From contig NC_047032.1 of NCBI RefSeq assembly GCF_902652985.1, positions 30,194,001 to 30,258,000 on the forward strand: a DNA stretch of 64,000 bases, in the 5' to 3' direction. The notes beneath the pieces were generated by a model, which saw nothing but the letters and a program-made list of their open reading frames with translations, ran no database searches and had not been told where the DNA came from. The translations under genes and the position numbers were made by a program. Shown here in pieces: positions 9,324-55,378 of the stretch. Each line of letters opens with the position of its first letter. The stretch's first letter is position 1. Origin of the DNA: Pecten maximus. Taxonomy: Eukaryota.

Positions 9324-10696
9324 TCTCTACAAGTACTAACACAGAAATTATCTCTACCAGTACTTACACAGAAATTACCTCTACCAGTAATTACACAGAA
9401 ATTATCTCTACCAGTACTTACACAGAAATTATCTCTACCAGTAATTACACAGAAATTATCTCTACGAGTACTAACACAGAAATTATATCTACCAGTACTA
9501 ACACAGAAATTATCTCTACCAGTACTTACACAGAAATTATCTCTACGAGTACTTACACAGAAATTATCTCTACCAGTACTAACACAGAAATTATCTCTAC
9601 CAGTACTAACACAGAAATTATCTCTACTAGTACTTACACAGAAATTATCTCTACCAGTACTTACACAGAAATTATCTCTACCAGTACTTACACAGAAATT
9701 ATCTCTACCAGTACTTACACACAAATTATCTCTACCGGTACTTACACAGAAATTATCTCTACCAGTACTTACACAGAAATTATCTCTACCAGTACTAACA
9801 CAGAAATTATCTCTACCAGTACTTACACAGAAATTATCTCTACCAGTACTTACACAGAAATTATCTCTACCAGTACTTACACAGAAATTATCTCTACCAG
9901 TACTTACACACAAATTATCTCTACCGGTACTTACACAGAAATTATCTCTACCAGTACTTACACAGAAATTATCTCTACCAGTACTTACACAGAAATTATC
10001 TCTACCAGTTCTTACACAGAAATTATCTCTACCAGTACTAACACAGAAATTATCTCTACCAGTACTTACACAGAAATTATCTCTACCAGTACTTACACAG
10101 AAATTATCTCGACCAGTACTTACACAGAAATTATCTCTATCAGTACTTACACAGAAATTATCTCTACACAGAAATTATCTCTACCAGTACTTACACAGAA
10201 ATTATCTCTACCAGTACTTACACAGAAATTATCTCGACCAGTACTTACACAGAAATTGTCTCTTCCAGTACTAACACAGAAATTATCTCTACCAGTACTA
10301 ACACAGAAATTGTCTCTACCAGTACTAACACAGAAATTGTCTCTACCAGTACTAACACAGAAATTGTCTCTACCAGTACTTACACAGAAATTATCTCTAC
10401 CAGTACTTACACAGAAATTATCTCTACCGGTACTTACACAGAAATTATCTCTACCAGTACTTACACAGAAATTATCTCTACCAGTACTTACACAGAAATT
10501 ATCTCTACCGGTACTTACACAGAAATTATCTCTACCAGTACTTACACAGAAATTATCTCTACCAGTACTAACACAGAAATTGTCTCTACCAGTACTTACA
10601 CAGAAATTGTCTCTACCAGTACTAACACAGAAATTATCTCTACCAGTACTTACACAGAAATTGTCTCTCACCAGTACTTACACAGAAGTTATCTTT
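9324..10696. repeat. Minisatellite, 27-bp unit (acacagaaattatctctaccagtactt)
   Basis: About 50 copies; explains the TEIISTSTY / QKLSLPVLT / CVSTGRDNF ORFs. Confidence 0.97.
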
Positions 10697-11796: not shown

Positions 11797-12600
11797 CTGA
11801 AAACCAAACAATCACAACAGTAAACTCACATGCATGTGATAAGGAATTCACATGGAAAAACAGTAAAATGGAAAAGAAAAGAATTTCCTTTTACCAAAAT
11901 GGGTAAATAGTCCCTGGGAACATGCCAAGGTAGTAAATGCTATGAGCAATGCTTCAGTTACTTTGAGAAACATTCTCGAAAAATTTCCCATGAAATTGCT
12001 TCCTGCTCACGGAGATTTGGCTACAGTTCTGATCAAAAGAATTAGGGGCATGAAATCATTTACAAACGCAAACGTTTTCCCCCAGATCATGTGTTACCAT
12101 TTTGCTAAATATTCTGTGAACAAAACATTTCATAATGAATGATTAATATCTATATAGGATATAGAAATATATACGTGTTATATTTGGCAGCAATAGTATC
12201 CAGATTGTCACCATTGAATTAAGGGCAATAACTCATTTTATGCAACAATCTCCAAATTGCAAGCAATGCATGAAATATTCAACAATATTCTATGATCAAT
12301 ATAAGAATAGGTTCATATAAAATACATATCTAGGAAGCACATTAACATCAATAAACCCAAAACCCGTTTTCTAAGTGGTACTTGATTAATGAAATAGGGG
12401 GTGATTCTCTGAAACATCTCCCCAAGGGAAACATGATCGAACATCAGTGTTACCCCTTCGATTGTTATTCAACATCATAGGGACCAAATTAGGTCGAAAT
12501 ATTTGGGACATTGAAGGCCAATCGAAGGAATAATACACAAATAGGGGGCACTTATGATGCAAGATATATTCTAGGCTAAACGTTACGAAAAGAGGTGTAC

Positions 12601-12685
12601 ATCGTGCTTGTAGGACATCGCCCGGCTGATAGATCAGATGGCCTTCTTCATCGTCCACAACTCTCGGACCAGCCTCACTTTCATC
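12601..12685 (-). CDS. CLK2: CLK kinase, 85-nt cassette exon (DESEAGPRVVDDEEGHLIYQPGDVLQAR), equivalent of the regulated vertebrate exon 4
   Basis: Family-diagnostic DDEEGHL..GD.L..RY motif; acceptor ggaacag| and weak donor CGAT|gtacac; length is 1 mod 3. Confidence 0.92.
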
Positions 12686-22980: not shown

Positions 22981-23331
22981 GAAATAAATTATATGATATA
23001 TACTATATACAATTACTTTTATACATCATATATTTTATCTAGCTAACAGTATCAGTATATTTAACAATTTTCTTTTTCTTTATAGGTTAAAAATAATATT
23101 TAAAATATATTTTGATCAGTTCACTATTGTAATTTCTTTTGTTATTAAATGTGGAAATTTCTTTCAAATTAGTTTAATTACACAATATATTGTAAAACAA
23201 ATTTTTGGAGTCAGCCTAATTTCTGTATGTGTACACAGTGTGGTATGTATGCTATATCCAGCTTCTTTATCAGTTCAATCAATAACATTTTATCCTATTT
23301 TTCCATCATCAATCAGCATATGTAAATTTCT

Positions 23332-23783
23332 TTTGTTTATGTATGATCAACTGACGGTCCTCCCGTACGAGAGCACACCTATTTGTTTATGTATGATCAA
23401 CCGACGGTCCTCCCGTACGAGAGCACACCTATTTGTTTATGTATGATCAACTGACGGTCCTCCCGTACGAGAGCACACCTATTTGTTTATGTATGATCAA
23501 CTGACGGTCCTCCCGTACGAGAGCACACCTTTCTGTTTATGTATGATCAACTGACGGTCCTCCCGTACGAGAGCACACCTTTCTGTTTATGTATGATCAA
23601 CTGACGGTCCTCCCGTACGAGAGCACACCTTTTTGGTTATGTATGATCAACTGACGGTCCTCCCGTACGAGAGCACACCTATTTGTTTATGTATGATCAA
23701 CTGACGGTCCTCCCGTACGAGAGCACACCTTTCTGTTTATGTATGATCAACTGACGGTCCTCCCGTACGAGAGCACACCTTTT
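23332..23783. repeat. Minisatellite, 50-bp unit, 9 copies (tttgtttatgtatgatcaactgacggtcctcccgtacgagagcacaccta)
   Basis: gtatgatcaa recurs every 50 nt from 23341 to 23741. Confidence 0.97.
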
Positions 23784-23999
23784 ACGTTCTGTGCACTGGC
23801 ACTGTCTGTTATTCTCCCATCTCCTAACACTTCTATAGCACATATCAAAACAAGTACAAATGCACAATCTTATGATATCTTATAGTAACACACCTGCCTA
23901 CCAAAATCAATCAAAGAGCAGACAACTCATCACTGACTTTTGTCACTCAATGCTAAGCCTTTATTTGACATTTTGACACATGTACAGTTTTTGACTTAC

Positions 24000-24013
24000 C
24001 TCCCAAGTTCCAG
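24000..24013 (-). other. Candidate 14-nt microexon of CLK (CTGGAACTTGGGAG)
   Basis: Pyrimidine tract plus ttttgacag| acceptor, consensus GAG|gtaagt donor, TGCATG ~30 nt upstream. Confidence 0.45.
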
Positions 24014-24632
24014 CTGTCAAAATAACATACAGGGAGACATGCACACAAGGGGAGGGGTGGGACATGTCTATAGATTTCTACCACATCAGGGCTATAATTT
24101 TCTCACATGAAATTAAGCATTCTCTTTTTTTGTCTATGCATGAGATAGCTACATAAGTTCCATTGGCTCCCCCCCCCTCCCCCCACTCTTTCTAAATGGT
24201 AAGTATTTCTGATATAAAGCTGTCAGTTAACGATCCTCTATTTACTAACCCAGATGTTTTTGCAAATAATATTCTTCATAAAAAAAAACTGTTGCAAATT
24301 GATTCAAATCAAGTATGACTTTTAGCAAAATGATATATAAATGCTATCTTTGTGTCCCTATCATCGAATATAAACCTGTTTTTCTGAGTCTATGTACCTT
24401 ATAGAAAATCACCATGATTAAAGGAAGTAATTATACACTGCACTATGTGATTATAAAATAAGATTATTGTATTTAGTTAACTAATGGAAATTGTTAATTG
24501 GTATATGTAGTTTCCAAAAATATAACCTTACCTAACATCACAAACAACTATGAGCTATTTGTACTTAATCTGGGGTTCAAGTAAGGGCGTTCATACAGGA
24601 ACTATATCTATATTGGTCACAACAACAGTTAC

Positions 24633-24652
24633 CTCCCTTCGACAAGTCAATT
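24633..24652 (-). other. Candidate 20-nt poison microexon of CLK (AATTGACTTGTCGAAGGGAG)
   Basis: ttttggtttttgtgtgcag| acceptor and GAG|gtaact donor; reads AAT TGA in frame with exon 3. Confidence 0.45.
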
Positions 24653-24888
24653 CTGCACACAAAAACCAAAATGGAAGTTTTCACACATATTCAAATTATA
24701 TACAAGAAAAAGAAATTTCAGAAACTGGTATTGTATACATTCAGATTTCTGATGTAATTGTTGTAAAACAAGAGAGGTGAGCTCTATGAGTTTGTACATG
24801 GTCAAGGGGAGGTAACTGTGGTGTGAGAACCTAACTCTGCCTGTGCTATGGTGGGTATAGGCCTACACATGTATAGAACAACTCCTAC

Positions 24889-25156
24889 CTTGCTTGAGTC
24901 AGAACTGAAGGTTGTATGTCTGTGATGACGATAACTTCGCCTTCTGCGGCGCCGATGGGGCCGATTTCGATTGTGGTGGCTGTTGTCACGGGAACGGTAG
25001 TGGCTGCCATGATCAGACTCATCGTAGTGACGACTGATGCGACTACGGCTGTGATTCTGGTAATCCCAGCGATCTCTCTCGGGGGTGTAGGATCGGTCCC
25101 GGTAGCTGTCCTGGTAGTCATGGTAATGGTCTCGGTCCCTTCGCCGCCTGTCACCA
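24889..25156 (-). CDS. CLK2: CLK kinase, Arg/Ser/His/Asp-rich N-terminal exon (SGDRRRRDRDHYH...FSSDSSK), 268 nt
   Basis: RS-like composition; ttacag| acceptor and AAG|gtagga donor; phases (2 in, 0 out) match both neighbouring exons. Confidence 0.85.
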
Positions 25157-26305
25157 CTGTAACAATATAGTAATACATGTAGTAAGTTATTCGTATTCTG
25201 CACTGTATAACATATTCAGCAAACAGATTGATCACCAGTTTTTCTGCAAGAGTAAATTAGGAATAATTTTTTTCTTAACTCTTAATTGGCATTGTTTACA
25301 TTATCCTCATTAATGCAGGGATTAATCTAGGCCTCAATATCCTGAACTCACCTACATTTTCCCAAAATATTGCACTTCATTTAATGCATGCTGTCTATCA
25401 GTAGATAACAAACTTTCTAAAGATCATGACAAATCAAAACAAACTTAATTAACTAATAATAGAGCTACAAATATGTTCATATTTATGGGTTTGCTAATTC
25501 CATACTATATTATATATATGTGTTAAAAGATCTAAGAGGTCTGCTGAGTATTATAATAGAATAATTTCCAGTGAGCAAACATGTCCTACTAGCAGGCCTG
25601 TATTGTTTGGAGTTACACCAGAAATTGTCAGTCATGTTGTTATTTATCTATTTAATTTAAAAATTTATTTTTATTTGTTTTCTTTCATAGGAAGTAATTA
25701 TTTTAGTTTCTGTATTCCTTTTCTATGACTGTTTATACATAATTATGACTGAATAGTATTAAATACTCTACATTACAGATGAAAATGGATCAAAATATTA
25801 CTGTTTTATCAAGCTTTTAATTATATATCTTGAGTTTGCAATATATTGCAATAAATATATCGCAATGTGACAATAAATATCGCAATATGAAAATTTTGGC
25901 AATACAGTGTACCCCACCCTAATATTTTGTTCAGTGTATTTCAAAATAGAAACATGAAGATTAGAGTGAAAATCTATCGTCATTGAGAGATAATTTACTA
26001 TATTACATCTAAACGTCACAAAGTTAACACCACAGTGTTGCTATCCAAAGGGAAGTGGAGCAAGCGGATTGTATTGTTACACTAGTACTAGAAACCTTCA
26101 CACAATACCTAATAAACTATGGTGGAAAATAGGTAACCTGACCGAAAAAAATAACTAAAATGTTTGATTCAGGACTCTTGAACATATTCATATGGTATTC
26201 GGTGATGGTGGGGTGTAGCTGTTTTTATTTTTTACATCAGCATAGCATGTTGACATGTTCAATCAAGAAAACATCATTGTTTTGTTTGTTTAAAAGCAAT
26301 TTATT

Positions 26306-26680
26306 TAAGCATTGATGTCATTTTTTTTTAGTTTCATCGGGGTTTTGTTTGCAAACTGTATGAATCCGCATAGCGGATTCTTACAGAAGTTTGCAAACAA
26401 AATTTGTTTCATACCCCGATGAAACTAAAAAATAATTGACATCAAAGCTTATAATTAATTTTTGAAAAAGGTTTTCTAATTTAAAACATGTTTTATGTAC
26501 AATTTTACTGGTTTTAAATGGGATTCTTTTTCTCAAATCAACACGCAACGTCAATTGTCGTATTGTGACGTCACATTTTTCGCGTCATTCTCGGAATTTC
26601 TTTCATAGAAGAATGAAAAGAATTTTTCGACCAGTCACATTTGAGTAATTACCATGAAAACAAAGAAAAATTAATTATTT
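26306..26680. mobile_element. Palindromic non-autonomous DNA element remnant (hairpin 26306-26451)
   Basis: Nested inverted arms tttagtttcatcgggg/ccccgatgaaactaaa, ttttgtttgcaaact/agtttgcaaacaaaa and gaatccgc/gcggattc; right boundary approximate. Confidence 0.55.
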
Positions 26681-26842
26681 ACATATGAATCAACACAAAA
26701 TCCTCTGTATGTAACTCTGACACGAATAATTCATTAGCAAACTCTTGCACACAGTTAGTTATGGTTGTGATCTATATACTGAGTTGGGTTTAAAGTTGGG
26801 CCTACAATATATTTGACAGATTTTAACATTAAACTTTGAGAG

Positions 26843-27863
26843 TGAAATGTTGAATCCTGGCGTTAGAGAAGTTAATGTTGAATCCTGTCATTAGAGAAGT
26901 GAAATGTTGAATCCTGTCATTAGAGAAGTTAATGTTGAATCCTGGCGTTAGAGAAGTTAATGTTGAATCCTGTCGTTAGAGAAGTTAATGTTGAATCCTG
27001 TCGTTAGAGAAGTTAACGTTGAATCCTGTCGTTAGAGAAGTTAATGTTGAATCCTGTCGTTAGAGAAGTGAATGTTGAATCCTGTCGTTAGAGAAGTTAA
27101 TGTTGAATCCTGTCGTTAGAGAAGTTAATGTTGAATCCTGTCATTAGAGAAGTTAATGTTGAATCCTGTCGTTAGAGAAGTTAATGTTGAATCCTGTCGT
27201 TAGAGAAGTTAATGTTGAATGCTGTCGTTAGAGAAGTTAATGTTGAATCCTGTCGTTAGAGAAGTTAATGTTGAATCCTGGCGTTAGAGAAGTTAATGTT
27301 GAATCCTGTCGTTAGAGAAGTTAATGTTGAATCCTGTCATTAGAGAAGTTAATGTTGAATCCTGTCGTTAGAGCAGTTAATGTTGAATCCTGTCATTAGA
27401 GAAGTTAATGTTGAATCCTGTCATTAGAGAAGTTAATGTTGAATCCTGTCATTAGAGAAGTTAATGTTGAATCCTGTCGTTAGAGAAGTTAATGTTGAAT
27501 CCTGGCGTTAGAGAAGTTAATGTTGAATCCTGTCATTAGAGAAGTTAATGTTGAATCCTGTCGTTAGAGAAGTTAATGTTGAATCCTGTCATTAGAGAAG
27601 TGAAATGTTGAATCCTGTCGTTAGAGAAGTTAATGTTGAATCCTGTCGTTAGAGAAGTTAATGTTGAATCCAGTCGTTAGAGAAGTTAATGTTGAATCCA
27701 GTCGTTAGAGAAGTGAAATGTTGAATCCTGTCATTAGAGAAGTGAAATGTTGAATCCTGTCATTAGAGAAGTTAATGTTGAATCCTGTCATTAGAGAAGT
27801 TAATGTTGAATCCTGTCGTTAGAGAAGTTAATGTTGAATCCTGTCGTTAGAGAAGTTAACGTT
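26843..27863. repeat. Minisatellite, 28-bp unit (aatgttgaatcctgtcgttagagaagtt)
   Basis: About 36 copies. Confidence 0.97.
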
Positions 27864-29228
27864 GGGTGCATTGAAATTTTGCAACATTGCTATTAGTAGC
27901 GAAACCATTCAATGACATAACAATGAATAACGATTTATTGACGTCAATTCAATTCTTGATTCATTATGCCCAGATTTCGATTAGTGTTTCTGGTTTCTAT
28001 GAAAGCTGAGAGAGCTGTACAAGCAATACATTTGATTGGCTGACAACTTGTACTATGAGCTCACTCAACCAATCACAACGACTGTGACATGAATACAACA
28101 ATATCACATTATCAAGGATGACGGAAAGATCTAGTTGGTCCATTAGCTTTTTAAAACCACTGGTATGAAAGCATTTCGGCTTCCAGTCAGTTGGAGGGAA
28201 AGCAGACAAAAACACAACTGTCTGACAAATAATTTAGGTTTTCCTTTTGTTTGTGAGTTATTTGTGAAAAACAGAATTACTTCTGGGCTGAATAAATAAT
28301 CGAAATGAAAATAATTGAATTGTCATGAGATAAGAATCGAGAATTGAATCACATCATGGCATGGGAAACTTGAATAAAAGCATCCCTTACTGCAATGATG
28401 TTCAGTCAATTGAGATGACACTTTCTATCATGTTCACATGCAATGTGACAGTCAGATATTACTTATGATAGAACTCTCAACCAGACATTCTGCATCACAT
28501 GTCTTCACAAAGTTTACTATGCAAATAAAGAATATCAATTGAATTTGAGCTGTGCATTTGTTTTGTATCTGAAAATGAAAAGTGAAGAACAATACAACTC
28601 TGACGAAATATGATCATTAAAATTTTATTTAAAATTTGCAGCAATGATTTTGGTATTCAAATGGTACCCCTTAAATACTAAATTTACCTTTTCCCTCGAA
28701 AATCTAGCTGTACCTCCAATGTTCAAACCATGTGAGTATACCAAACCCCCACAAAAAACGTGGATGGTTACACTGCTTTACCATTATGCATGGTGCAGTG
28801 ATTGGAATCAATAATCAATTAAAATCAATTATTTTTTAATTATCTTTCTCAGTGCTTACTGCACCATTCCAGCCATCTAGACACTTTTATTTTATATGAT
28901 AAAAGCAACAACATAATCCATTGTGAAAAATTTATCTCACATGTAATACCAAACAGCTGATAATCATTCGTTTAGCATGATGTCGGGTATTTCTGACTAA
29001 AGATCAATTACAGATTTCTTACTCGATTAATTGGACAAACACCCCAAACAAGTAATGCCATACAAGCTTGATTAATCAGAACACCCTTGCTAGGTGTATA
29101 ACATAGGTGCTCAAATGAGATTATATTATATAGGCTGAATGTAGTTGGAGGTGCTTAAATCAGTTTAAAAATTCTGAATCTACCTTCAGTACTATCACTT
29201 ATTTCCAAATCTGTGAAAAAATACATAC

Positions 29229-29353
29229 CTTCTGCTTCTGCTCCTGGACCGACGATGTCTCGAGTCCTCGTAATAATCACCTCTTCGCCGTTTATACTCA
29301 AACGAAGAGTCTCTACTCCGTGACCGATTCCTTCTTCTCGTTGACCTAGGCAT
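29229..29353 (-). CDS. CLK2: CLK kinase, first coding exon (MPRSTRRRNRSRSRDSSFEYKRRRGDYYEDSRHRRSRSRSR), 125 nt
   Basis: RS-dipeptide-rich; ATG immediately after the tttag| acceptor; donor AG|gtatgt; phase 2 joins the 25156 exon. Confidence 0.85.
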
Positions 29354-31400: not shown

Positions 31401-32211
31401 GTGCGCGACAATCTTATAGACCGGGAACGGTTAGGGCCATGTTCAAAAACGGCTTGACAGAAGAGTTTAGTTTTCGACGGACCTAGGTGATATCAGAGAC
31501 GTATATACCATGATATACAAGTCTCTGGTGATATTATATACTTTTTGGCGTGTATATTGACAGAAACTTAATATATGTATTTCCAGAGACCTAGGTCTCT
31601 GATATTTCCAATGTATTAACGTTACATTTAACATGTGTGATAACTTGTAAGTACCTTGCACGCGCCATTTAATTTGTATGAGAGAGAGAGAGATGCAAAT
31701 AAATAATGAAAAAGGGAAATCTTTACAACAGGTCATTTCGCCGTAAATTCATTACCATGTCGCCCCAAAATTCAATTCGACAACAGAAAGATATTCACGT
31801 CTATTAAATTGTTTATGTTGTTGTTGTTTTTTAGATTTTTTTTAGATATCTATTAAAATAATAGTTTTATTTATTTACAACAATTGCGAAACAATGGCCT
31901 AGATAAAATATTACCTCTGCGACAGGTAACAGGTATTACAATGTTACCAATCAGTTTCAACATCCGTTTCTTTAATAGAAAAAAGTTTTACACAGAATGT
32001 ACCGTACCTAACCAACATTGTGGATTTTCCAATGGTGTTTAATTCTGTTGTGTTTTCAATAGGGATATATATTATAACGGGTATGTCCCTGGTTTTCAAA
32101 GTTTAGAATTGGTATAAAATCATGCTCATATGGACGGAGTTTGAGTTTAAAGTTCTGAGTGAATAGGCTACATGTATCTGCATAAAATGGACACTTAATT
32201 ACAAAACAATA

Positions 32212-32370
32212 TGTAACCCTGGTAAATACAAGCCGCAATATAGCGCTCGGCTAGAGAGATCTTCTCTTTAGCTCGATCGGTTGAGCGTAAGACTAGTAAG
32301 CCAGCGGTCCTGGGTTCGATCCCTAGCGGAGGCAGTGATTTAAATTACATTAATCCTGAGCTCTGTTACA
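32212..32370 (+). mobile_element. 159-bp element with TGTAAC...GTTACA termini enclosing a tRNA-Thr(AGT)-like sequence (solo-LTR-like)
   Basis: 6-bp inverted termini; A box tagctcgatcgg, anticodon loop ctagtaa, B box ggttcgatccc; stems imperfect, so not a functional tRNA. Confidence 0.65.
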
Positions 32371-32922
32371 CCTATATAAGTATCACGATTATTACATAAC
32401 GCACAGACTGTCAATATTATTGATATTGAAATAACGTTTAGCCAGCGACCAGTAGAGTGAGGATAGAGCTGCTTGGGAATAGTGTACATATACACACATT
32501 TAGCTAGGTTCGATGTACCAAAACGCTATCCAACTAGCCTAATCAAAAAAGTTTAATTTGGACAGAGACGTATATATAGGTCACTGATTTGGGTTAGTTT
32601 TATGTCATGCGTTTCGTTTCCATTTGTGAACAGAAGAAAACCAATATTTTAGCCTTTTCAATCACGGCTTTCTCATTGCTTTTCACTTCAATTTAATGGG
32701 ATTGATTGTGTACACTAACCGGGGTTTTGGTTTTCTTCATTGGAGTGGAAACTATTTTATAATAATCCGTAACTCTAATCTTTTAATCCAATATTGTGTT
32801 ATAACGTTGTTTTTTTGTTTTTTTTTCTTTGTAGAAAACTTCCTATTCAGACGTGGAATTATTTCTTTTAATGTTCCCATTATTTTCCAGCAGTAGATGC
32901 TGTCGGTACACATTTAGCCCAG

Positions 32923-35900
32923 GTGTAGCGAGGTAGGGCCGAGGGCGGGTCGTCCGTGTGTAGCGAGGTAGGGCCGAGGGCGGGTAGTCCCTGTGTAGCA
33001 AGGTAGGGCCGAGGGCGGGTCGTCCATGTGTAGCGAGGTAGGGCCGAGGGCGGGTAGTACCTGTGTAGCAAGGTAGGGCCGAGGGCGGGTCGTCCATGTG
33101 TAGCGAGGTAGGGCCGAGGGCGGGTAGTCCCTGTGTAGCAAGGTAGGGCCGAGGGCGGGTCGTCCATGTGTAGCGAGGTAGGGCCGAGGGCGGGTCGTCC
33201 ATGTGTAGCGAGGTAGGGCCGAGGGCGGGTAGTCCCTGTGTAGCAAGGTAGGGCCGAGGGCGGGTCGTCCATGTGTAGCGAGGTAGGGCCGAGGGCGGGT
33301 AGTCCCTGTGTAGCGATATAGGGCCGAGGGCGGGTTGTCCCTGTGTAGCGATATAGGGCCGAGGGCGGGTTGTCCCTGTGTAGCGATATAGGGCCGAGGG
33401 CGGGTAGTCCCTGTGTAGCGAGATAGGGTCGAGGGCGGGTAGTACCTGTGTAGCGAGGTAGGACCGAGGGCGGGTAGTCCCTGTGTAGCGAGGTAGGGCC
33501 GAGGGCGGGTAGTACCTGTGTAGCGAGGTAGGGCCGAGGGCGGGTAGTCCCTGTGTAGCGAGGTAGGACCGAGGGCGGGTAGTCCCTGTGTAGCGATGTA
33601 GGGCCGAGGGCGGGTAGTCCCTGTGTAGCGAGGTAGGACCGAGGGTGGATAGTCCCTGTGTAGCGAGGTAGGACCAAGGGCGGGTAGTCCCTGTGTAGCG
33701 AGGTAGGACCAAGGGCGGGTAGTCCCTGTGTAGCGAGGTAGGACCAAGGGCGGGTAGTCCCTGTGTAGCGAGGTAGGACCGAGGGTGGATAGTCCCTGTG
33801 TAGCGAGGTAGGGCCGAGGGCGGGTAGTCCCTGTGTAGCGAGGCAGGGCCGAGGGTGGGTAGTCCCTGTGTAGCGAGGTAGGACCGAGGGCGGGTAGTCC
33901 ATGTGTAGCGAGGTAGGGCCGAGGGCGGGTAGTCCCTGTGTTGCGAGGTAGGGCCGAGGGTGGATAGTCACTCTGTAGCGAGGTAGGGCCGAGGGTGGAT
34001 AGTCACTCTGTAGCGAGGTAGGGCCGAGGGCGGGTAGTCCGTGTGTAGCGAGGTAGGGCCGAGGGCGGGTAGTCCATGTGTAGCAAGGTAGGGCCGAGGG
34101 CGGGTAGTCCATGTGTAGCAAGGTAGGACCGAGGGCGGGTAGTCCATGTGTAGCGAGGTAGGGCCGAGGGCGGGTAGTCCATGTGTAGCAAGGTAGGGCC
34201 GAGGGCGGGTAGTCCCTGTGTAGCGAGGCAGGGCCGAGGGTGGGTAGTCCCTGTGTAGCGAGGTAGGACCGAGGGTGGATAGTCCCTGTGTAGCGAGGTA
34301 GGGCCGCTGTCGGGTACTCCCTGTGTTGCGAGGTAGGGCCGAGGGTGGATAGTCACTCTGTAGCGAGGTAGGGCCGAGGGTGGATAGTCACTCTGTAGCG
34401 AGGTAGGGCCGAGGGCGGGTAGTCCGTGTGTAGCGAGGTAGGGCCGAGGGCGGGTAGTCCATGTGTAGCAAGGTAGGGCCGAGGGCGGGTAGTCCATGTG
34501 TAGCAAGGTAGGACCGAGGGCGGGTAGTCCATGTGTAGCGAGGTAGGGCCGAGGGCGGGTAGTCCATGTGTAGCAAGGTAGGGCCGAGGGCGGGTAGTCC
34601 ATGTGTAGCGAGGTAGGACCGAGGGCGGGTAGTCCATGTGTAGCGAGGTAGGGCCGAGGGCGGGTAGTCCCTGTGTAGCGAGGTAGGACCGAGGGCGGGT
34701 AGTCCCTGTGTAGTCCCTGTGTAGCAAGGTAGGGCCGAGGCCGGGTAGTCCGTGTGTATCGAGGTAGGACCGAGGGCGGGTAGTCCCTGTGTAGCGAGAT
34801 AGGGTCGAGGGCGGATAGTACCTGTGTAGCGAGGTAGGACCGAGGGCGGGTAGTCCCTGTGTAGCGATATAGGGCCGAGGGTGGATAGTCCATGTGTAGC
34901 GAGGTAGGACCGAGGGCGGGTAGTCCCTGTGTAGCAAGGTAGGGCCGAGGGCGGGTAGTCCATGTGTAGCGAGGTAGGACCGAGGGTGGATAGTCCCTGT
35001 GTAGCGAGGTAGGGCCGAGGGCGGGTAGTCCCTGTGTAGCGAGGTAGGACCGAGGGCCGGGAGTCCGTGTGTAGCGAGGTAGGACCGAGGGCGGGTAGTC
35101 CCTGTGTAGCGAGGTAGGGCCGAGGGCGGGTAGTTCCTGTGTAGCGAGGTAGGACCGAGGGTGGGTAGTCCCTGTGTAGCGAGGTAGGGCCGAGGGTGGA
35201 TAGTCACTGTGTAGCGAGGTAGGACCGAGGGTGGATAGTCCCTGTGTAGCGAGGTAGGACCAAGGGCGGGTAGTCCCTGTGTAGCGAGGTAGGACCAAGG
35301 GCGGGTAGTCCCTGTGTAGCGAGGTAGGACCGAGGGTGGGTTGTCCCTGTGTAGCGAGGTAGGACCGAGGGCGGGTAGTCCCTGTGTAGCGAGATAGGGC
35401 CGAGGGCGGGTAGTCCCTGTGTAGCGAGGTAGGGCCGAGGGCGGGTAGTACCTGTGTAGCGAGGTAGGGCCGAGGGTGGATAGTCCCTGTGTAGCGAGGT
35501 AGGACCGAGGGCGGGTAGTCCCTGTGTAGCGAGGTAGGACCAAGGGTGGATTGTCCCTGTGTAGCGAGGTAGGACCGAGGGCGGGTAGTCCCTGTGTAGC
35601 GAGGTAGGACCGAGGGCGGGTAGTCCCTGTGTAGCGAGGTAGGACCGAGGGCGGGTAGTCCCTGTGTAGCGAGGTAGGACCGAGGGTGGATAGTCCTTGT
35701 GTAGCGAGGTAGGACCGAGGGTGGATAGTCCCTGTGTAGCGAGGTAAGACCGAGGGCGGGTTGTCCCTGTGTAGCGAGGTAGGGCCGAGGGCGGGTAGTC
35801 CGTGTGTAGCGAGGTAGGACCGAGGGAGGGTAGTCCCTGTGTAGCGAGGAAGGGCCGAGGGCGGGTAGTCCCTGTGTAGCGAGGTAGGACCGAGGGCGGG

Positions 35901-36471
35901 TAGTACCTGTGTAGCGAGGTAGGGCCGAGGGCGGGTAGTCCGTGTGTAGCGAGGTAGGACCGAGGGTGGGTAGTCCCTGTGTAGTGAGGTAGGGCCGAGG
36001 GCGGGTTGTCCCTGTGTAGCGATATAGGGCCGAGGGCGGGTAGTCCGTGTAGGACCGAGGGTGGGTAGTCCCTGTGCAGTGAGGTAGGACCGAGGGCGGG
36101 TTGTCCCTGTGTAGCGAGGTAGGACCGAGGGCGGGTTGTCCCTGTGTAGCGAGGTAGGACCGAGGGCGGGTAGTCCCTGTGTAGCGAGGCAGGGCCGAGG
36201 GCGGGTTGTCTCTGTGTAGCGATATAGGGCCGAGGGCGGGTTGTCCCTGTGTAGCGATATAGGGCCGAGGGCGGGTTGTCCCTGTGTAGCGATATAGGGC
36301 CGAGGGCGGATAGTCCATGTGTAGCGATATAGGTCCGAGGGCGGGTAGTCCCTGTGTAGCGAGGTAGGGCCGAGGGCGGGTAGTCCCTGTGTAGCGAGGT
36401 AGGGCCGAGGGCGGGTAGTCCCTGTGTAGCGAGGTAGGGCCGAGGGCGGGTAGTCCCTGTGTAGCGAGGTA
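32923..36471. repeat. GC/CpG-rich minisatellite, 35-bp unit (gtgtagcgaggtagggccgagggcgggtagtccct)
   Basis: About 100 copies; source of all overlapping PRYTGTTRPR ORFs on the minus strand. Confidence 0.98.
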
Positions 36472-36761
36472 TACAAAGAATGCACGTCCCTGTTTTATTA
36501 CAATGTAAATTGTATATCAGAGTATTGACGCTTAAATATTTTATCAATGTAATATTGGTATATCTAGCCTTTATAGAACTAGCAATGAAATGTGCTGAAA
36601 TCGAAATAAACATGCAAATATACAACATGCCATTACAGCTGTCACCTTTCTGAGATCTATACATCACACCTGTAAATAACAGAACGTGCCTGAAGGTCAC
36701 AGATACTGGTGATAACCGTTAGGTAGGACACTCGTGTATTGTATATTCACACCTGAGTAAG

Positions 36762-38095
36762 TCTGCTGAAGGGTAATTACCAAATACAGTAACCTTACCC
36801 TCTGCTGAAGGGTAATTACCAAATATAGTAACCTTACCCTCTGCTGAAGGGTAATTACCAAATATAGTACCCATACCCTCTACTGAAGGGTAATTACCAA
36901 ATATAGTACCCATACCCTCTACTGAAGGGTAATTACCAAATACAGTAACCATACCCTCTACTGAAGGGTAATTACCAAATACAGTAACCATACCCTCTAC
37001 TGAAGGGTAATTACCAAATATAGTACCCATACCCTCTACTGAAGGGTAATTACCAAATACAGTAACCATACCCTCTACTGAAGGGTAATTACCAAATATA
37101 GTACCCATACCCTCTACTGAAGGGTAATTACCAAATATAGTACCCATACCCTCTACTGAAGGGTAATTACCAAATACAGTACCCATACCCTCTACTGAAG
37201 GGTAATTACCAAATATAGTACCCATACCCTCTACTGAAGGGTAATTACCAAATATAGTACCCATACCCTCTACTGAAGGGTAATTACCAAATACAGTACC
37301 CATACCCTCTACTGAAGGGTAATTACCAAATACAGTAACCATACCCTCTGCTGAAGGGTAATTACCAAATACAGTACCCATACCCTCTACTGAAGGGTAA
37401 TTACCAAATACAGTACCCATACCCTCTACTGAAGGGTAATTACCCAATATAGTACCCATACCCTCTACTGAAGGGTAATTACCAAATATAGTACCCATAC
37501 CCTCTACTGAAGGGTAATTACCAAATACAGTAACCATACCCTCTACTGAAGGGTAATTACCAAATACAGTAACCATACCCTCTACTGAAGGGTAATTACC
37601 AAATACAGTACCCATACCCTCTACTGAAGGGTAATTACCAAATATAGTACCCATACCCTCTACTGAAGGGTAATTACCAAATATAGTACCCATACCCTCT
37701 ACTGAAGGGTAATTACCAAATATAGTACCCATACCCTCTACTGAAGGGTAATTACCAAATACAGTACCCATACCCTCTACTGAAGGGTAATTACCAAATA
37801 TAGTACCCCTACCCTCTACTGAAGGGTAATTACCAAATATAGTACCCATACCCTCTACTGAAGGGTAATTACCAAATATAGTACCCATACCCTCTACTGA
37901 AGGGTAATTACCAAATATAGTACCCATACCCTCTACTGAAGGGTAATTACCAAATATAGTACCCATACCCTCTACTGAAGGGTAATTACCAAATATAGTA
38001 CCCATACCCTCTACTGAAGGGTAATTACCAAATACAGTAACCATACTCTCTACTGAAGGGTAATTACCAAATACAGTAACCATACCCTCTACTGA
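36762..38095. repeat. Minisatellite, 39-bp unit (ctctactgaagggtaattaccaaatatagtacccatacc)
   Basis: About 34 copies; source of the FGNYPSVEGMGTI ORF. Confidence 0.97.
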
Positions 38096-38479
38096 GACCA
38101 CAACTAACGATAAACGGGCCTGTAAGTAATTCTATAGTTTCTCATTATATACCAATTCTAATCTAGGTCATTTTATCTAATCCAATTAATCTTATATCGA
38201 AATATCTGTTTTAATTTTTTATGTAACTATCCCTTAACAAATTCACCACATCAAAGCAAAAGTGGAGGGGTTTATCATTGATTACAAACCGTTTACTTTG
38301 GTTATTTCTCTTTCTCGGCACAAGTATACTGAAGTTAACAGAGATAGTTACGAATATGTTACAAAACGGATTCGTTACTCGTCAAAACAGTACTTTAATT
38401 AAACTTTATTTCGTTTCTTTTGATCAGAGACTTGTATATCAGGGGTATATACGTCTCTGTTTTGATAGAGCATATGACA

Positions 38480-53884: not shown

Positions 53885-54030
53885 ATATTCATGTCCAGCA
53901 GGACACCCCACCTGGTCTCATTATACTGACAACAGTCAAACCAGTCGTCCCACTCCTAAAATGCCAAGCATAAGGAGAGAGTAGCAACTACCATTTGTAT
54001 AGACTCTGGTATGTCTCAACTCAGGGAACA
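53885..54030 (-). mobile_element. SINE fragment (Meta/MESC-like core), degraded
   Basis: Reverse complement reads ...gacataccagagtctatacaaatggtagttgctactc...cttggcattttaggagtgggacgactgg...tcagtataatg, resembling molluscan SINE cores. Confidence 0.5.
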
Positions 54031-54109
54031 GAGCCAACATTGAATAGACTCCACCATAAACAATTGAATGAATGAATTATATAAATGGGAATCATCTTGC
54101 ATGAGGACA

Positions 54110-55378
54110 TTGTTGAGTCAATTTGGTCAGAAACATCCTTTGGGGAAGGGGAACAGATTTTGCATAAATGGTTACTCTGACCCCCAAGGGGCCAAAGGGG
54201 TGGGGCCTAATGGGGAAATAGAGGTAATTCCTTCAAATCGCTACTAGTCATAAAGTTCTGAATGGATTTGAACCCAATTTGGTCAGACATATCCTTGGCA
54301 GAAGGGGATCAGATTTTGCATAAATGGTGACTCTGACCCCCAAGGGGCCTGAGGGGCGGGGCCCAATAGAGGAAATTGAGGCAATTCCTTTAAATCGCTA
54401 CTAGTCATAAAGTTCTGAATGGATTTGAAGCCAATTTGGTCAATAACATCCTTTGGGGAAGGGGAACAGATTTTGCATAAATGGTGACTCTGACCCCCAA
54501 GGGGCCAAAGGGGTGGGGCCTAATGGGGAAATAGAGGTTATTCCTTCAAATCGCTACTAGTCATAAAGTTCTGAATGGATTTGAACCCAATTTGGTCAGA
54601 AATATCCTTGGCAGAAGGGGATCAGATTTTGCATAAATGGTGACTCTGACCCCCAAGGGGCCTGAGGGGCGGGGCCCAATAGAGGAAATAGAGGCAATTC
54701 CTTTAAATCGCTACTAGTCATAAAGTTATGAATGGATTTGAACCCAATTTGGTCAGAAACATCCTTTGGGGAAGGGGAACAGATTTTGCATAAATGGTTA
54801 CTCTGACCTCCAAGGGGCCAAAGGGGCGGGGCCTAATGGGGAAATAGAGGTTATTCCTTTAAATAGCTACTTGTCATAAAGTTATGAATGGATTTGAACC
54901 CAATTTGGTCAGAAACATTCTTGGGGGAAGGGGAACAGATTTTGCATAAATGGTGACTCTGACCCCCCAAGGGCCAAAGGGACGGGGCCTAATGGGGAAA
55001 TAGAGGTAATTCCTTAAAATCGCTACTAGTCATAAAGTTAATTATGAATGGATTTGAAACCCAATTTTGGTAAGAAACATTCTTGGGGAAAGGGGAACAG
55101 ATTTTGCATAAATGGTGACTCTGACCCCCAAGGGGCAAAAGGGGCGGGGCCCCATATGGGATATAGAGGTAATTCCTTTAAATCACTACTAGAATGCATG
55201 TTGTAAACTCAGAGAGTCTGGACTTCATTATTTCTTTAAAGCAATTGGGATCCCCACGCTATAACCATATATAGCATTGTTTGAGGTTAACAACAAAACG
55301 AATTGAACATGAACATTATTTTGACATTTGGTTAAATCCAACCAGGTGAGCGATACAGGCCCCATGGGCCTCTTGTTT
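54110..55378 (+). mobile_element. HINE/pearl-like element carrying ~7 tandem ~157-bp (BIV160-like) core repeats
   Basis: aatttggtca recurs at 54120, 54276, 54433 and onward; 3' end caggtgagcgatacaggccccatgggcctcttgtt. Confidence 0.8.

What the first reader, a model, noticed from the sequence alone, without database searches (positions are those of the whole stretch)
24617..24826. RNA duplex burying the donor of a 20-nt stop-codon microexon, with an A.C mismatch
Seen: 24801-24826 and 24617-24643 are inverted repeats. On the CLK pre-mRNA, ucacaccacaguuaccuccccuugac (63-88 nt after the exon-3 donor) can pair with gucgaagggag|guaacuguuguuguga over ~24 bp, with one G.U, one A.C mismatch (A at 24638), one C.U and one bulge. 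The second arm covers the 3' half and the whole donor of a candidate microexon that reads AAT TGA in frame. Established: duplexes can mask 5' splice sites, and A.C mismatches in dsRNA are preferred ADAR sites. Inference: a structure-, editing- or temperature-gated poison exon.
Basis: partly seen in the sequence, partly recalled or inferred. Interest (0 to 1): 0.8.

Follow-up and report, generated by a model that had tools for sequence, protein, structure and literature searches.

The report
Conserved RNA stem in scallop CLK intron
A 24-base-pair RNA hairpin just inside the long regulated intron of a scallop CLK splicing-kinase gene is real, single-copy and kept by compensating mutations in a distant relative, but nothing supports the proposed temperature- or editing-gated stop-codon microexon.

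Summary
Arms 24826-24801 and 24643-24617 (minus-strand RNA) pair over about 24 bp at -35 kcal/mol, and the stem buries the GAG|GUAACU end of a 20-nt AG..GT segment that reads AAT TGA in frame after CLK exon 3. The duplex is stronger than any found in 20 shuffles of 21 kb. The region is single copy in the 918-Mb genome.

The only relative I could reach is one 933-nt Logan contig. Its four-fold sites are near saturation, yet it keeps the stem at the same place, with three double compensatory changes and three one-sided changes. G.U pairs favour the sense RNA.

- In the relative the in-frame TGA is absent, the donor GT is GC (with a compensating change in the other arm), and the A.C mismatch is a U-A pair.
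- The stem stays more than 99% paired from 0 to 37 C in the model.
- RNA contigs from three independent data sets show no microexon junction and no A>G difference.
- Those contigs instead run unspliced from exon 3 into at least 890 nt of intron 3, while intron 2 is cleanly removed.

Best reading: a selected structural element of a retained CLK intron that keeps a pseudo or decoy exon closed.

The parts
24889..25156 (-). CLK exon 3 (268 nt, RS-rich N-terminal region), ending AAG|GT in phase 0
   Evidence: Spliced joint 25156->29229 (CT..AC on the + strand, i.e. GT..AG on the minus strand) in all four runs. ORF. 80% amino-acid identity to the relative.
24000..24888 (-). 5' part of intron 3 that is present in RNA contigs (retained or detained intron, or read-through)
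   Evidence: X1 record 3 joins exon 2 to exon 3 and runs on unspliced to 24425. X2 record 16 covers 24555-24918. X8 record 22 covers 24554-24800. Further contigs reach 24000. Intron 2 (25157-29228) is empty apart from a dispersed repeat.
24827..24842 (-). Conserved unpaired island holding a UUAGG motif, directly upstream of the stem
   Evidence: 88% identical to the relative, against 52% for the loop. The link to hnRNP A1-type UAGG motifs is an inference from memory.
24801..24826 (-). Upstream arm of the stem, 63-88 nt after the exon 3 donor. It holds the TGA (24804-24802) that ends the frame if the intron is retained.
24644..24800 (-). Loop of 157 nt (131 nt in the relative), poorly conserved except at its 3' end
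24653..24666 (-). Conserved pyrimidine/GU-rich tract ending in CAG (3' splice-site-like), lying in the loop
   Evidence: 79% identical to the relative although it is not part of the stem.
24633..24652 (-). Candidate 20-nt microexon / pseudo-exon (AAT TGA in frame); its 3' half is in the stem
   Evidence: Sequence; frame. No junction in RNA contigs. In the relative it is 14 nt and has no in-frame stop.
24617..24643 (-). Downstream arm of the stem; covers GAG|GUAACU (GT at 24632-24631)
   Evidence: 81% identical to the relative.
12601..12685 (-). CLK exon 4 (85 nt, frame-shifting if skipped), the next constitutive or regulated exon, 12.2 kb downstream
   Evidence: Single copy in the genome.

Best explanation
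The inverted repeat encodes a selected RNA stem of about 24 bp that closes a 130-160-nt loop. It begins about 63 nt inside intron 3 of the single CLK (LAMMER kinase) gene of this scallop-type genome. This is the 12.2-kb intron that precedes the frame-shifting exon 4, and its 5' part persists in RNA while the neighbouring intron is removed.

The hairpin encloses an exon-like module. A conserved 3'ss-like tract ending in CAG lies in the loop, and a 5'ss-like GGUAAC lies in the stem. The stem is closed at every physiological temperature. I therefore read it as a constitutive structural repressor or organiser: it keeps U1 off the pseudo-5' splice site, so the pseudo or decoy exon is not spliced in, and it thereby sets how the regulated intron is handled.

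Shown: the stem exists, is strong, is single copy, has been kept by compensatory change, and prefers the sense strand; the intron's 5' part is retained in RNA. Inferred: any effect on splicing.
For: - Strength: the duplex is -34.9 kcal/mol and is part of the MFE and centroid folds. It is the strongest local duplex in 21 kb and beats all 20 shuffles, whose best was -28.5.
- Copy number: the region is single copy in the 918-Mb genome. The same search finds more than 2000 candidates for a real foldback repeat 1.6 kb away.
- Depth of the comparison: in relative L022, exon 3 is 76.7% identical at the nucleotide level and only 8 of 25 four-fold sites are the same. Even so, its stem sits at +65 from the donor and is as strong, at -35 to -37 kcal/mol.
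- Covariation: RNAalifold keeps 17 pairs, with 2 double compensatory and 3 one-sided changes. A third double change (24802/24642, A-U to U-A) is read by hand.
- Controls: 9 and 7 random substitutions in the two arms give -12.8 +/- 4.4 kcal/mol, and 0 of 5000 trials reach the observed value. Cross-species arm hybrids reach only -27.
- Strand: in the relative the sense strand folds at -35.0 and the antisense at -27.5.
- Stability: pairing probability stays above 0.99 from 0 to 37 C.
- Exon-like signal: the 3'ss-like tract in the loop is conserved although it is unpaired.
- RNA: contigs retain at least 890 nt of intron 3, while intron 2 is spliced out.
Against: - Only one relative could be retrieved, so covariation rests on two sequences of unknown taxonomic distance.
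- The RNA data are assembled contigs, not reads. Isoform ratios cannot be measured, and it cannot be told whether all 12 kb of the intron are retained or the transcript ends inside it.
- No junction shows that the pseudo-exon is ever recognised.
- The donor is GC in the relative, so masking a 5' splice site may not be what selection sees.
- The 16-nt arm core is over-represented in the genome (95 hits against 2 for the control). This hints at a repeat-related origin that I cannot explain.
- Thermodynamic folding ignores co-transcriptional kinetics, proteins and helicases.
Confidence: 0.45

Rival explanations
1. The 20-nt segment is a genuine poison microexon, included under some condition when the stem is opened by temperature, A-to-I editing at the A.C mismatch, or a helicase. 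Inclusion truncates CLK after the RS region.
For: In this genome the segment has a CAG acceptor with a pyrimidine-rich tract, a usable GAG|GTAACT donor and an immediate in-frame TGA. The acceptor tract is conserved. Both the 20-nt and the 14-nt version shift the frame by +2, so both would be poisonous. The stem covers the donor completely. Contigs cannot exclude a rare or condition-specific isoform.
Against: No joint at 24889->24652 or at 24633 appears in the contigs of three independent data sets. In the relative the TGA is out of frame, the donor is GC, and the A.C mismatch is a U-A pair. The stem is more than 99% paired from 0 to 37 C. No A>G difference appears in the contigs.
Confidence: 0.12
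2. The stem is selected for a role unrelated to the splice-site-like letters inside it. Examples are a double-stranded RNA platform for a dsRNA-binding protein that holds the intron-retaining CLK transcript in the nucleus, or a fold that shortens the path from the exon 3 donor to downstream intronic elements.
For: The pairing is kept while the donor GT is lost in the relative, so the stem itself is the conserved object. The intron's 5' part is present in RNA. In mammals, intron 3/4-retaining Clk1/4 RNA is pooled in the nucleus (PMC3187705).
Against: This model does not explain why the unpaired CAG tract next to the stem is conserved. A 24-bp stem is short for known dsRNA retention signals (from memory). 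No editing footprints were seen.
Confidence: 0.2
3. The inverted repeat has no function. It is an old local inverted duplication or repeat remnant whose arms happen to remain complementary, and the exon-like look is coincidence in a 12-kb intron.
For: Inverted repeats of 20 of 22 pairs occur at about the chance rate in the window. The arm core is a word over-represented in this genome and is the core of several minisatellites. Only two species were compared.
Against: Four-fold sites are near saturation, yet the stem survives with 16 arm substitutions, 0 of 5000 random trials match it, and G.U pairs favour the sense RNA. Its position relative to the donor is kept at +63 versus +65. The region is single copy.
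Confidence: 0.15

Closest known systems
Stem-loops that mask a 5' splice site (MAPT exon 10 stem-loop, SMN2 exon 7 TSL2; from memory). See also RNA structural repression of cryptic splice sites (PMC13692680).
   Same: The 5'ss-like nucleotides -3 to +6 are fully base-paired, which should block U1 pairing. Compensatory changes keep the stem.
   Different: The known cases are short local hairpins at the donor of a used exon. Here the stem is a long-range 24-bp duplex closing a ~157-nt loop around an unused 20-nt pseudo-exon, and one arm lies upstream of that exon's acceptor.
Retained/detained introns 3 and 4 around exon 4 of vertebrate CLK1/CLK4 (PMC3187705; review PMC11346455)
   Same: The same gene family and the same place in the gene: the intron before the short frame-shifting exon that precedes the kinase domain. 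Intron sequence persists in RNA while other introns are removed.
   Different: The vertebrate introns are short, and their cis-element was mapped to about 400 nt around exon 4. Here the intron is 12.2 kb and the conserved element sits at its 5' end. No hairpin is described in the papers I read. Nuclear retention and stress response were not tested here.
Decoy exons that promote intron retention (OGT, SF3B1, SNRNP70; PMC7373989)
   Same: A conserved, essentially unspliced exon-like unit with a 3'ss and a 5'ss, lying inside a large retained intron of a splicing regulator.
   Different: Known decoys are longer and are not reported to be closed by a stem. Here the 5'ss is GC in the relative, and no rare junction has yet been seen.
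ADAR substrates with an intronic editing-complementary sequence, and RNA thermometers
   Same: An imperfect intramolecular duplex containing an A.C mismatch.
   Different: The mismatch is not conserved, no A>G difference was seen, and the stem does not melt in the physiological range.

Membership tests
Structure-masked 5' splice site | Splice-site nucleotides -3..+6 are paired in a stable structure | tested here: met
   MFE and centroid folds; duplex energy -34.9 kcal/mol; pairing probability above 0.99.
Structure-masked 5' splice site | The structure is conserved with compensatory changes | tested here: met
   One relative only. Two double changes by RNAalifold plus one read by hand, and three one-sided changes. 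0 of 5000 random-substitution trials match the observed energy.
Structure-masked 5' splice site | Opening the structure raises use of the site | not testable with these tools
   Needs minigene or antisense experiments.
Poison (NMD) cassette exon | Exon junctions are found in some transcripts | tested here: inconclusive
   No joint 24889->24652 or 24633->downstream in the contigs of four runs from three data sets. Contigs cannot prove absence.
Poison (NMD) cassette exon | Inclusion gives a premature stop, and this is conserved | tested here: inconclusive
   There is an in-frame TGA here. The relative has none inside the segment, but its 14-nt length also shifts the frame by +2.
Poison (NMD) cassette exon | Canonical splice sites are conserved | tested here: not met
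   The acceptor CAG is kept, but the donor GT is GC in the relative.
ADAR editing site | A>G RNA/DNA difference at the proposed adenosine | tested here: inconclusive
   No difference at 24638/24639 in the contigs (table 3). Contigs drop rare variants.
ADAR editing site | The edited A.C context is conserved | tested here: not met
   The pair 24806/24638 is U-A in the relative.
RNA thermometer | The structure opens within the organism's temperature range | tested here: not met
   Modelled pairing probability is above 0.99 from 0 to 37 C and above 0.94 at 55 C. This is an equilibrium model only.
MITE / terminal inverted repeats of a dispersed element | Many dispersed copies share the arms and the interior | tested here: not met
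   Only the locus itself matches 24600-24840 and 24000-24900. The same search finds more than 2000 candidates for the repeat at 26290-26690. The 22-nt arm alone has 95 near-matches, but their flanks are unrelated.
CLK1/4-type retained (detained) intron | The intron next to the frame-shifting pre-kinase exon persists in RNA while others are spliced | tested here: met
   24000-24888 is covered, and one contig joins it to spliced exons 2-3. Intron 2 is empty. Only the first ~890 nt were examined.
CLK1/4-type retained (detained) intron | Nuclear pooling, with splicing triggered by stress or CLK inhibition | not testable with these tools
   Needs cell fractionation and stress or inhibitor time courses.
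Decoy exon | An exon-like unit with conserved splice-site motifs inside a retained intron, and rarely spliced | tested here: inconclusive
   It lies in the retained part and is unspliced in the contigs. The 3'ss tract is conserved, but the 5'ss is GT here and GC in the relative.

The most novel reading that the evidence does not exclude
An ancient, covarying RNA stem in the autoregulatory intron of an invertebrate CLK gene works as a switch. The stem would be opened not by melting but by co-transcriptional kinetics, a helicase, or SR-protein or CLK activity. Opening exposes a decoy or poison microexon and so couples kinase activity or environmental stress to CLK output in an ectotherm. That would be a cis-RNA layer of the CLK temperature and stress circuit not described in vertebrates.
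Probability: 0.15. Interest if true: 0.8.

Novelty: new variant of a known kind. Interest (0 to 1): 0.5.

Why it matters
CLK kinases set SR-protein phosphorylation and are held to be the temperature sensors of animal splicing. Their own output is controlled by splicing around exon 4. The vertebrate cis-elements for this control are only roughly mapped, and nothing is known for molluscs.

A compact, covarying RNA stem with an enclosed exon-like unit gives a concrete target at the 5' end of the equivalent intron. It can be mutated in a marine ectotherm that lives through large temperature swings. It would also be a clean natural example of selection tracking base pairing across a splice-site dinucleotide, since GT became GC with a compensating change in the other arm.

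If the stem has no effect on splicing, the case is still a caution. An attractive structure-gated poison-exon story can be built from one genome when its stop codon, donor and mismatch are not conserved.

Tried and rejected
- MITE or TIR origin. Own-genome DNA searches with 241 nt and 901 nt found only the locus itself. The positive control worked. Rejected as a classical MITE. The over-representation of the 22-nt arm word, with unrelated flanks, remains unexplained.
- Thermometer. Rejected on modelled pairing probabilities.
- ADAR gating. The mismatch is not conserved and no A>G difference appears in the contigs. The contigs are weak evidence.
- A switch in which the upstream arm pairs alternately with the authentic exon 3 donor. 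That pairing gives only -12 to -13.5 kcal/mol in both species. Rejected.
- Known RNA family. Rfam finds nothing at 23500-25300, even at E = 1.
- More relatives. A word search with the exon 3 reading frame, the same search with a two-sequence profile, the full representative search and a metagenome locus scan all returned only P0001/L022 or nothing. The L022 intron finds no second copy in the own genome, and there is no CLK paralogue with this exon 4.
- The run accession of L022 appears in no paper held, so its species is unknown.
This is why no annotated orthologous genes with their introns could be fetched.
- Whole-region fold z-score is only -1.73. That measure dilutes a single strong stem and was not used as evidence either way.

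Full report
**What is there.** The minus strand of the window carries a CLK (LAMMER) kinase gene.
- Exon 2 ends at 29229.
- Exon 3 is 25156..24889. It is 268 nt, encodes an Arg/Ser/His-rich region, and ends AAG|GT.
- The next coding exon is 12685..12601. It is 85 nt and encodes the conserved EGHLIYQPGDVL motif just before the GEGTFGKV kinase exon near 11800.
- Intron 3 is therefore 12.2 kb. Exon 3 ends and exon 4 starts in phase 0.
- The exon 2-exon 3 joint is seen in all four sequencing runs laid on the region.
- The genome has 918 Mb in 3983 contigs, and this CLK exon 4 occurs once in it.

**The observation.**
- The inverted repeat is exactly as described. On the pre-mRNA, 24826-24801 pairs with 24643-24617. 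There are 19 Watson-Crick pairs, one G.U, one C.A (A at 24638) and one C.U, then four more pairs beyond a one-base bulge.
- The upstream arm starts 63 nt after the exon 3 donor.
- The downstream arm covers GAG|GUAACU, the donor-like end of a 20-nt segment (24652-24633). That segment follows a pyrimidine-rich tract plus CAG and would read AAT TGA in frame.
- The arm-arm duplex is -34.9 kcal/mol and appears in the MFE and centroid folds.
- By simple match counting, such repeats are as frequent as chance predicts, and the whole-region z-score is only -1.73.
- By duplex energy, this is the strongest local pair in 21 kb. None of 20 dinucleotide shuffles of that 21 kb came closer than -28.5 kcal/mol.

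**Is it a transposon?**
- Own-genome DNA searches with 241 nt and 901 nt around the hairpin return only the locus itself.
- The same tool finds more than 2000 candidates, at 93-94% identity, for a ~390-nt foldback repeat 1.6 kb away in intron 2. The negative result is therefore meaningful.
- One oddity remains. The 22-nt arm alone has 95 matches at up to 3 mismatches, against 2 for the reversed control. The shared part is a ~16-nt core. It sits at scattered single loci with unrelated flanks and forms the core of several different minisatellites.
- This is not a MITE signature, but I cannot explain it.

**Conservation.**
- A word search with the exon 3 reading frame found one protein, P0001. 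It is encoded on a 933-nt Logan contig, L022, from another sample.
- L022 reads through both exon 3 borders, so it carries 478 nt of the orthologous intron.
- It is a distant relative. Exon 3 is 76.7% identical at the nucleotide level, and only 8 of 25 four-fold degenerate sites agree.
- The intron is mostly unalignable (loop 52% identical), but islands stand out:
  - the donor-proximal 20 nt: 81%
  - an unpaired island with UUAGG just before the stem: 88%
  - the tract ending in CAG: 79%
  - the downstream arm: 81%
  - the upstream arm: 65%
- The stem is kept at +65 from the donor, with -35 to -37 kcal/mol.
- RNAalifold retains 17 pairs, with two double compensatory changes (C-G to G-C, A-U to G-C) and three one-sided changes (A-U to G.U twice, C-G to U.G). 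A third double change (24802/24642, A-U to U-A) is lost to gap placement but is clear by hand.
- Placing the observed 9 and 7 arm substitutions at random gives -12.8 +/- 4.4 kcal/mol, and 0 of 5000 trials reach the observed value. Arms swapped between species pair at only -27.
- In the relative the sense strand folds 7.5 kcal/mol better than the antisense, because of G.U pairs. This points to selection on the sense RNA rather than on a DNA palindrome.

**What is not conserved.** In L022:
- The exon-like segment is 14 nt and has no in-frame TGA, though it still shifts the frame by +2.
- The donor dinucleotide is GC, and this T>C is one half of a compensatory pair.
- The A.C mismatch is a U-A pair.

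Selection therefore follows the pairing. It does not follow the stop codon, the GT or the mismatch.

**Temperature.** In both species the ten core pairs that cover the donor keep a modelled probability above 0.99 from 0 to 37 C, and above 0.94 at 55 C. The stem cannot act as a thermometer by melting at sea temperatures. Kinetic or protein-driven opening is not excluded.

**RNA evidence.** Only assembled contigs were available. X1 and X15 appear to be one data set, so there are three independent sets.
- No joint 24889->24652 and no joint at 24633 is listed.
- No differing letter is listed between 24600 and 24830.
- One contig leaves exon 3 at 24888 into 27 nt that do not lie on the stretch. The shared G fits exon 4 (starts with G) and not the microexon (starts with A).
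- One contig in X1 joins exon 2 to exon 3 and then continues unspliced to 24425.
- Other contigs cover 24555-24918 (X2), 24554-24800 (X8) and down to 24000.
- Intron 2 is empty except for the dispersed repeat.

Intron 2 serves as the silent control against DNA contamination. The 5' part of intron 3 is therefore a real component of the RNA. With the intron retained, the frame runs 30 codons further and stops at the TGA at 24804-24802, inside the upstream arm. Contigs cannot give isoform ratios.

**Interpretation.**
- The gene position and the retention match the vertebrate CLK1/4 picture. There, the introns around exon 4 stay in a nuclear RNA pool and are spliced on stress or CLK inhibition (PMC3187705, PMC11346455).
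- A conserved, unspliced, exon-like unit inside a large retained intron of a splicing regulator is what the decoy-exon model describes (PMC7373989).
- A stem over a 5'ss-like sequence is the classical way to hide it from U1 (MAPT and SMN2, from memory; PMC13692680 for cryptic sites).
- My best reading (0.45) is that the hairpin is a selected, essentially always-closed structural element of this retained intron. It keeps a pseudo or decoy exon shut and so influences how the regulated intron is processed.
- An alternative pairing of the upstream arm with the true exon 3 donor is too weak to be a switch.
- Rfam has no family here.

**Limits.**
- There is one relative, of unknown species.
- Further searches were blank.
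- All structure statements are computational.

**Verdict.** I rate it a new variant of a known kind, of moderate interest.

Noticed in passing
window 26290-26690 (intron 2): A ~390-nt dispersed repeat whose first ~160 nt are self-complementary (foldback/MITE-like). It has more than 2000 candidate copies in the genome at 93-94% identity. RNA contigs cover it at enormous summed depth. It gives sub-threshold Rfam hits to MITE-derived plant miRNA families.
   Followed up: partly
own genome, e.g. L003, L004, L013, L018, L019: The 16-nt core of the hairpin arm (AAGGGGAGGTAACTGT) is about 50-fold over-represented against the reversed control. It is the core of several different minisatellites (periods of about 25, 28, 37 and 44 nt), and it also occurs at about 40 single loci with unrelated flanks. 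This is unexplained.
   Followed up: partly
window 23998-24190, minus strand: A second look-alike module lies deeper in intron 3. It is a 14-nt AG..GT segment (24013-24000) with a long pyrimidine tract and a perfect GAG|GTAAGT donor. An upstream G-run (near 24188) can pair with its C-rich tract (near 24064) at -31.7 kcal/mol. Its conservation could not be checked, because L022 ends before this point.
   Followed up: no
window 23330-23800: A tandem array of about eight 60-nt units in intron 3.
   Followed up: no
window 24165, 24171-24178, 24238, 24279: The RNA contigs of X1/X15 differ from the assembly by two substitutions, an 8-nt deletion and a 1-nt insertion. These are probably intron polymorphisms.
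   Followed up: no
window 36722-38131, minus strand: A 470-codon open frame made of 13-residue tandem repeats (GNYPSVEGMGTIF-like). It lies next to a GC-rich block with strong GC skew at 32000-36000, GC 0.52-0.64.
   Followed up: no
window 9340-10650 and 54000-55150: Two further tandem-repeat arrays showed up as clusters of inverted-repeat hits.
   Followed up: no
window 24877-24895 vs 24621-24639: The authentic exon 3 donor region and the pseudo-exon donor region are 74% alike over 19 nt, both ending in ..AG|GTA..GTTGTT (family D1). This may be a local duplication or chance.
   Followed up: no
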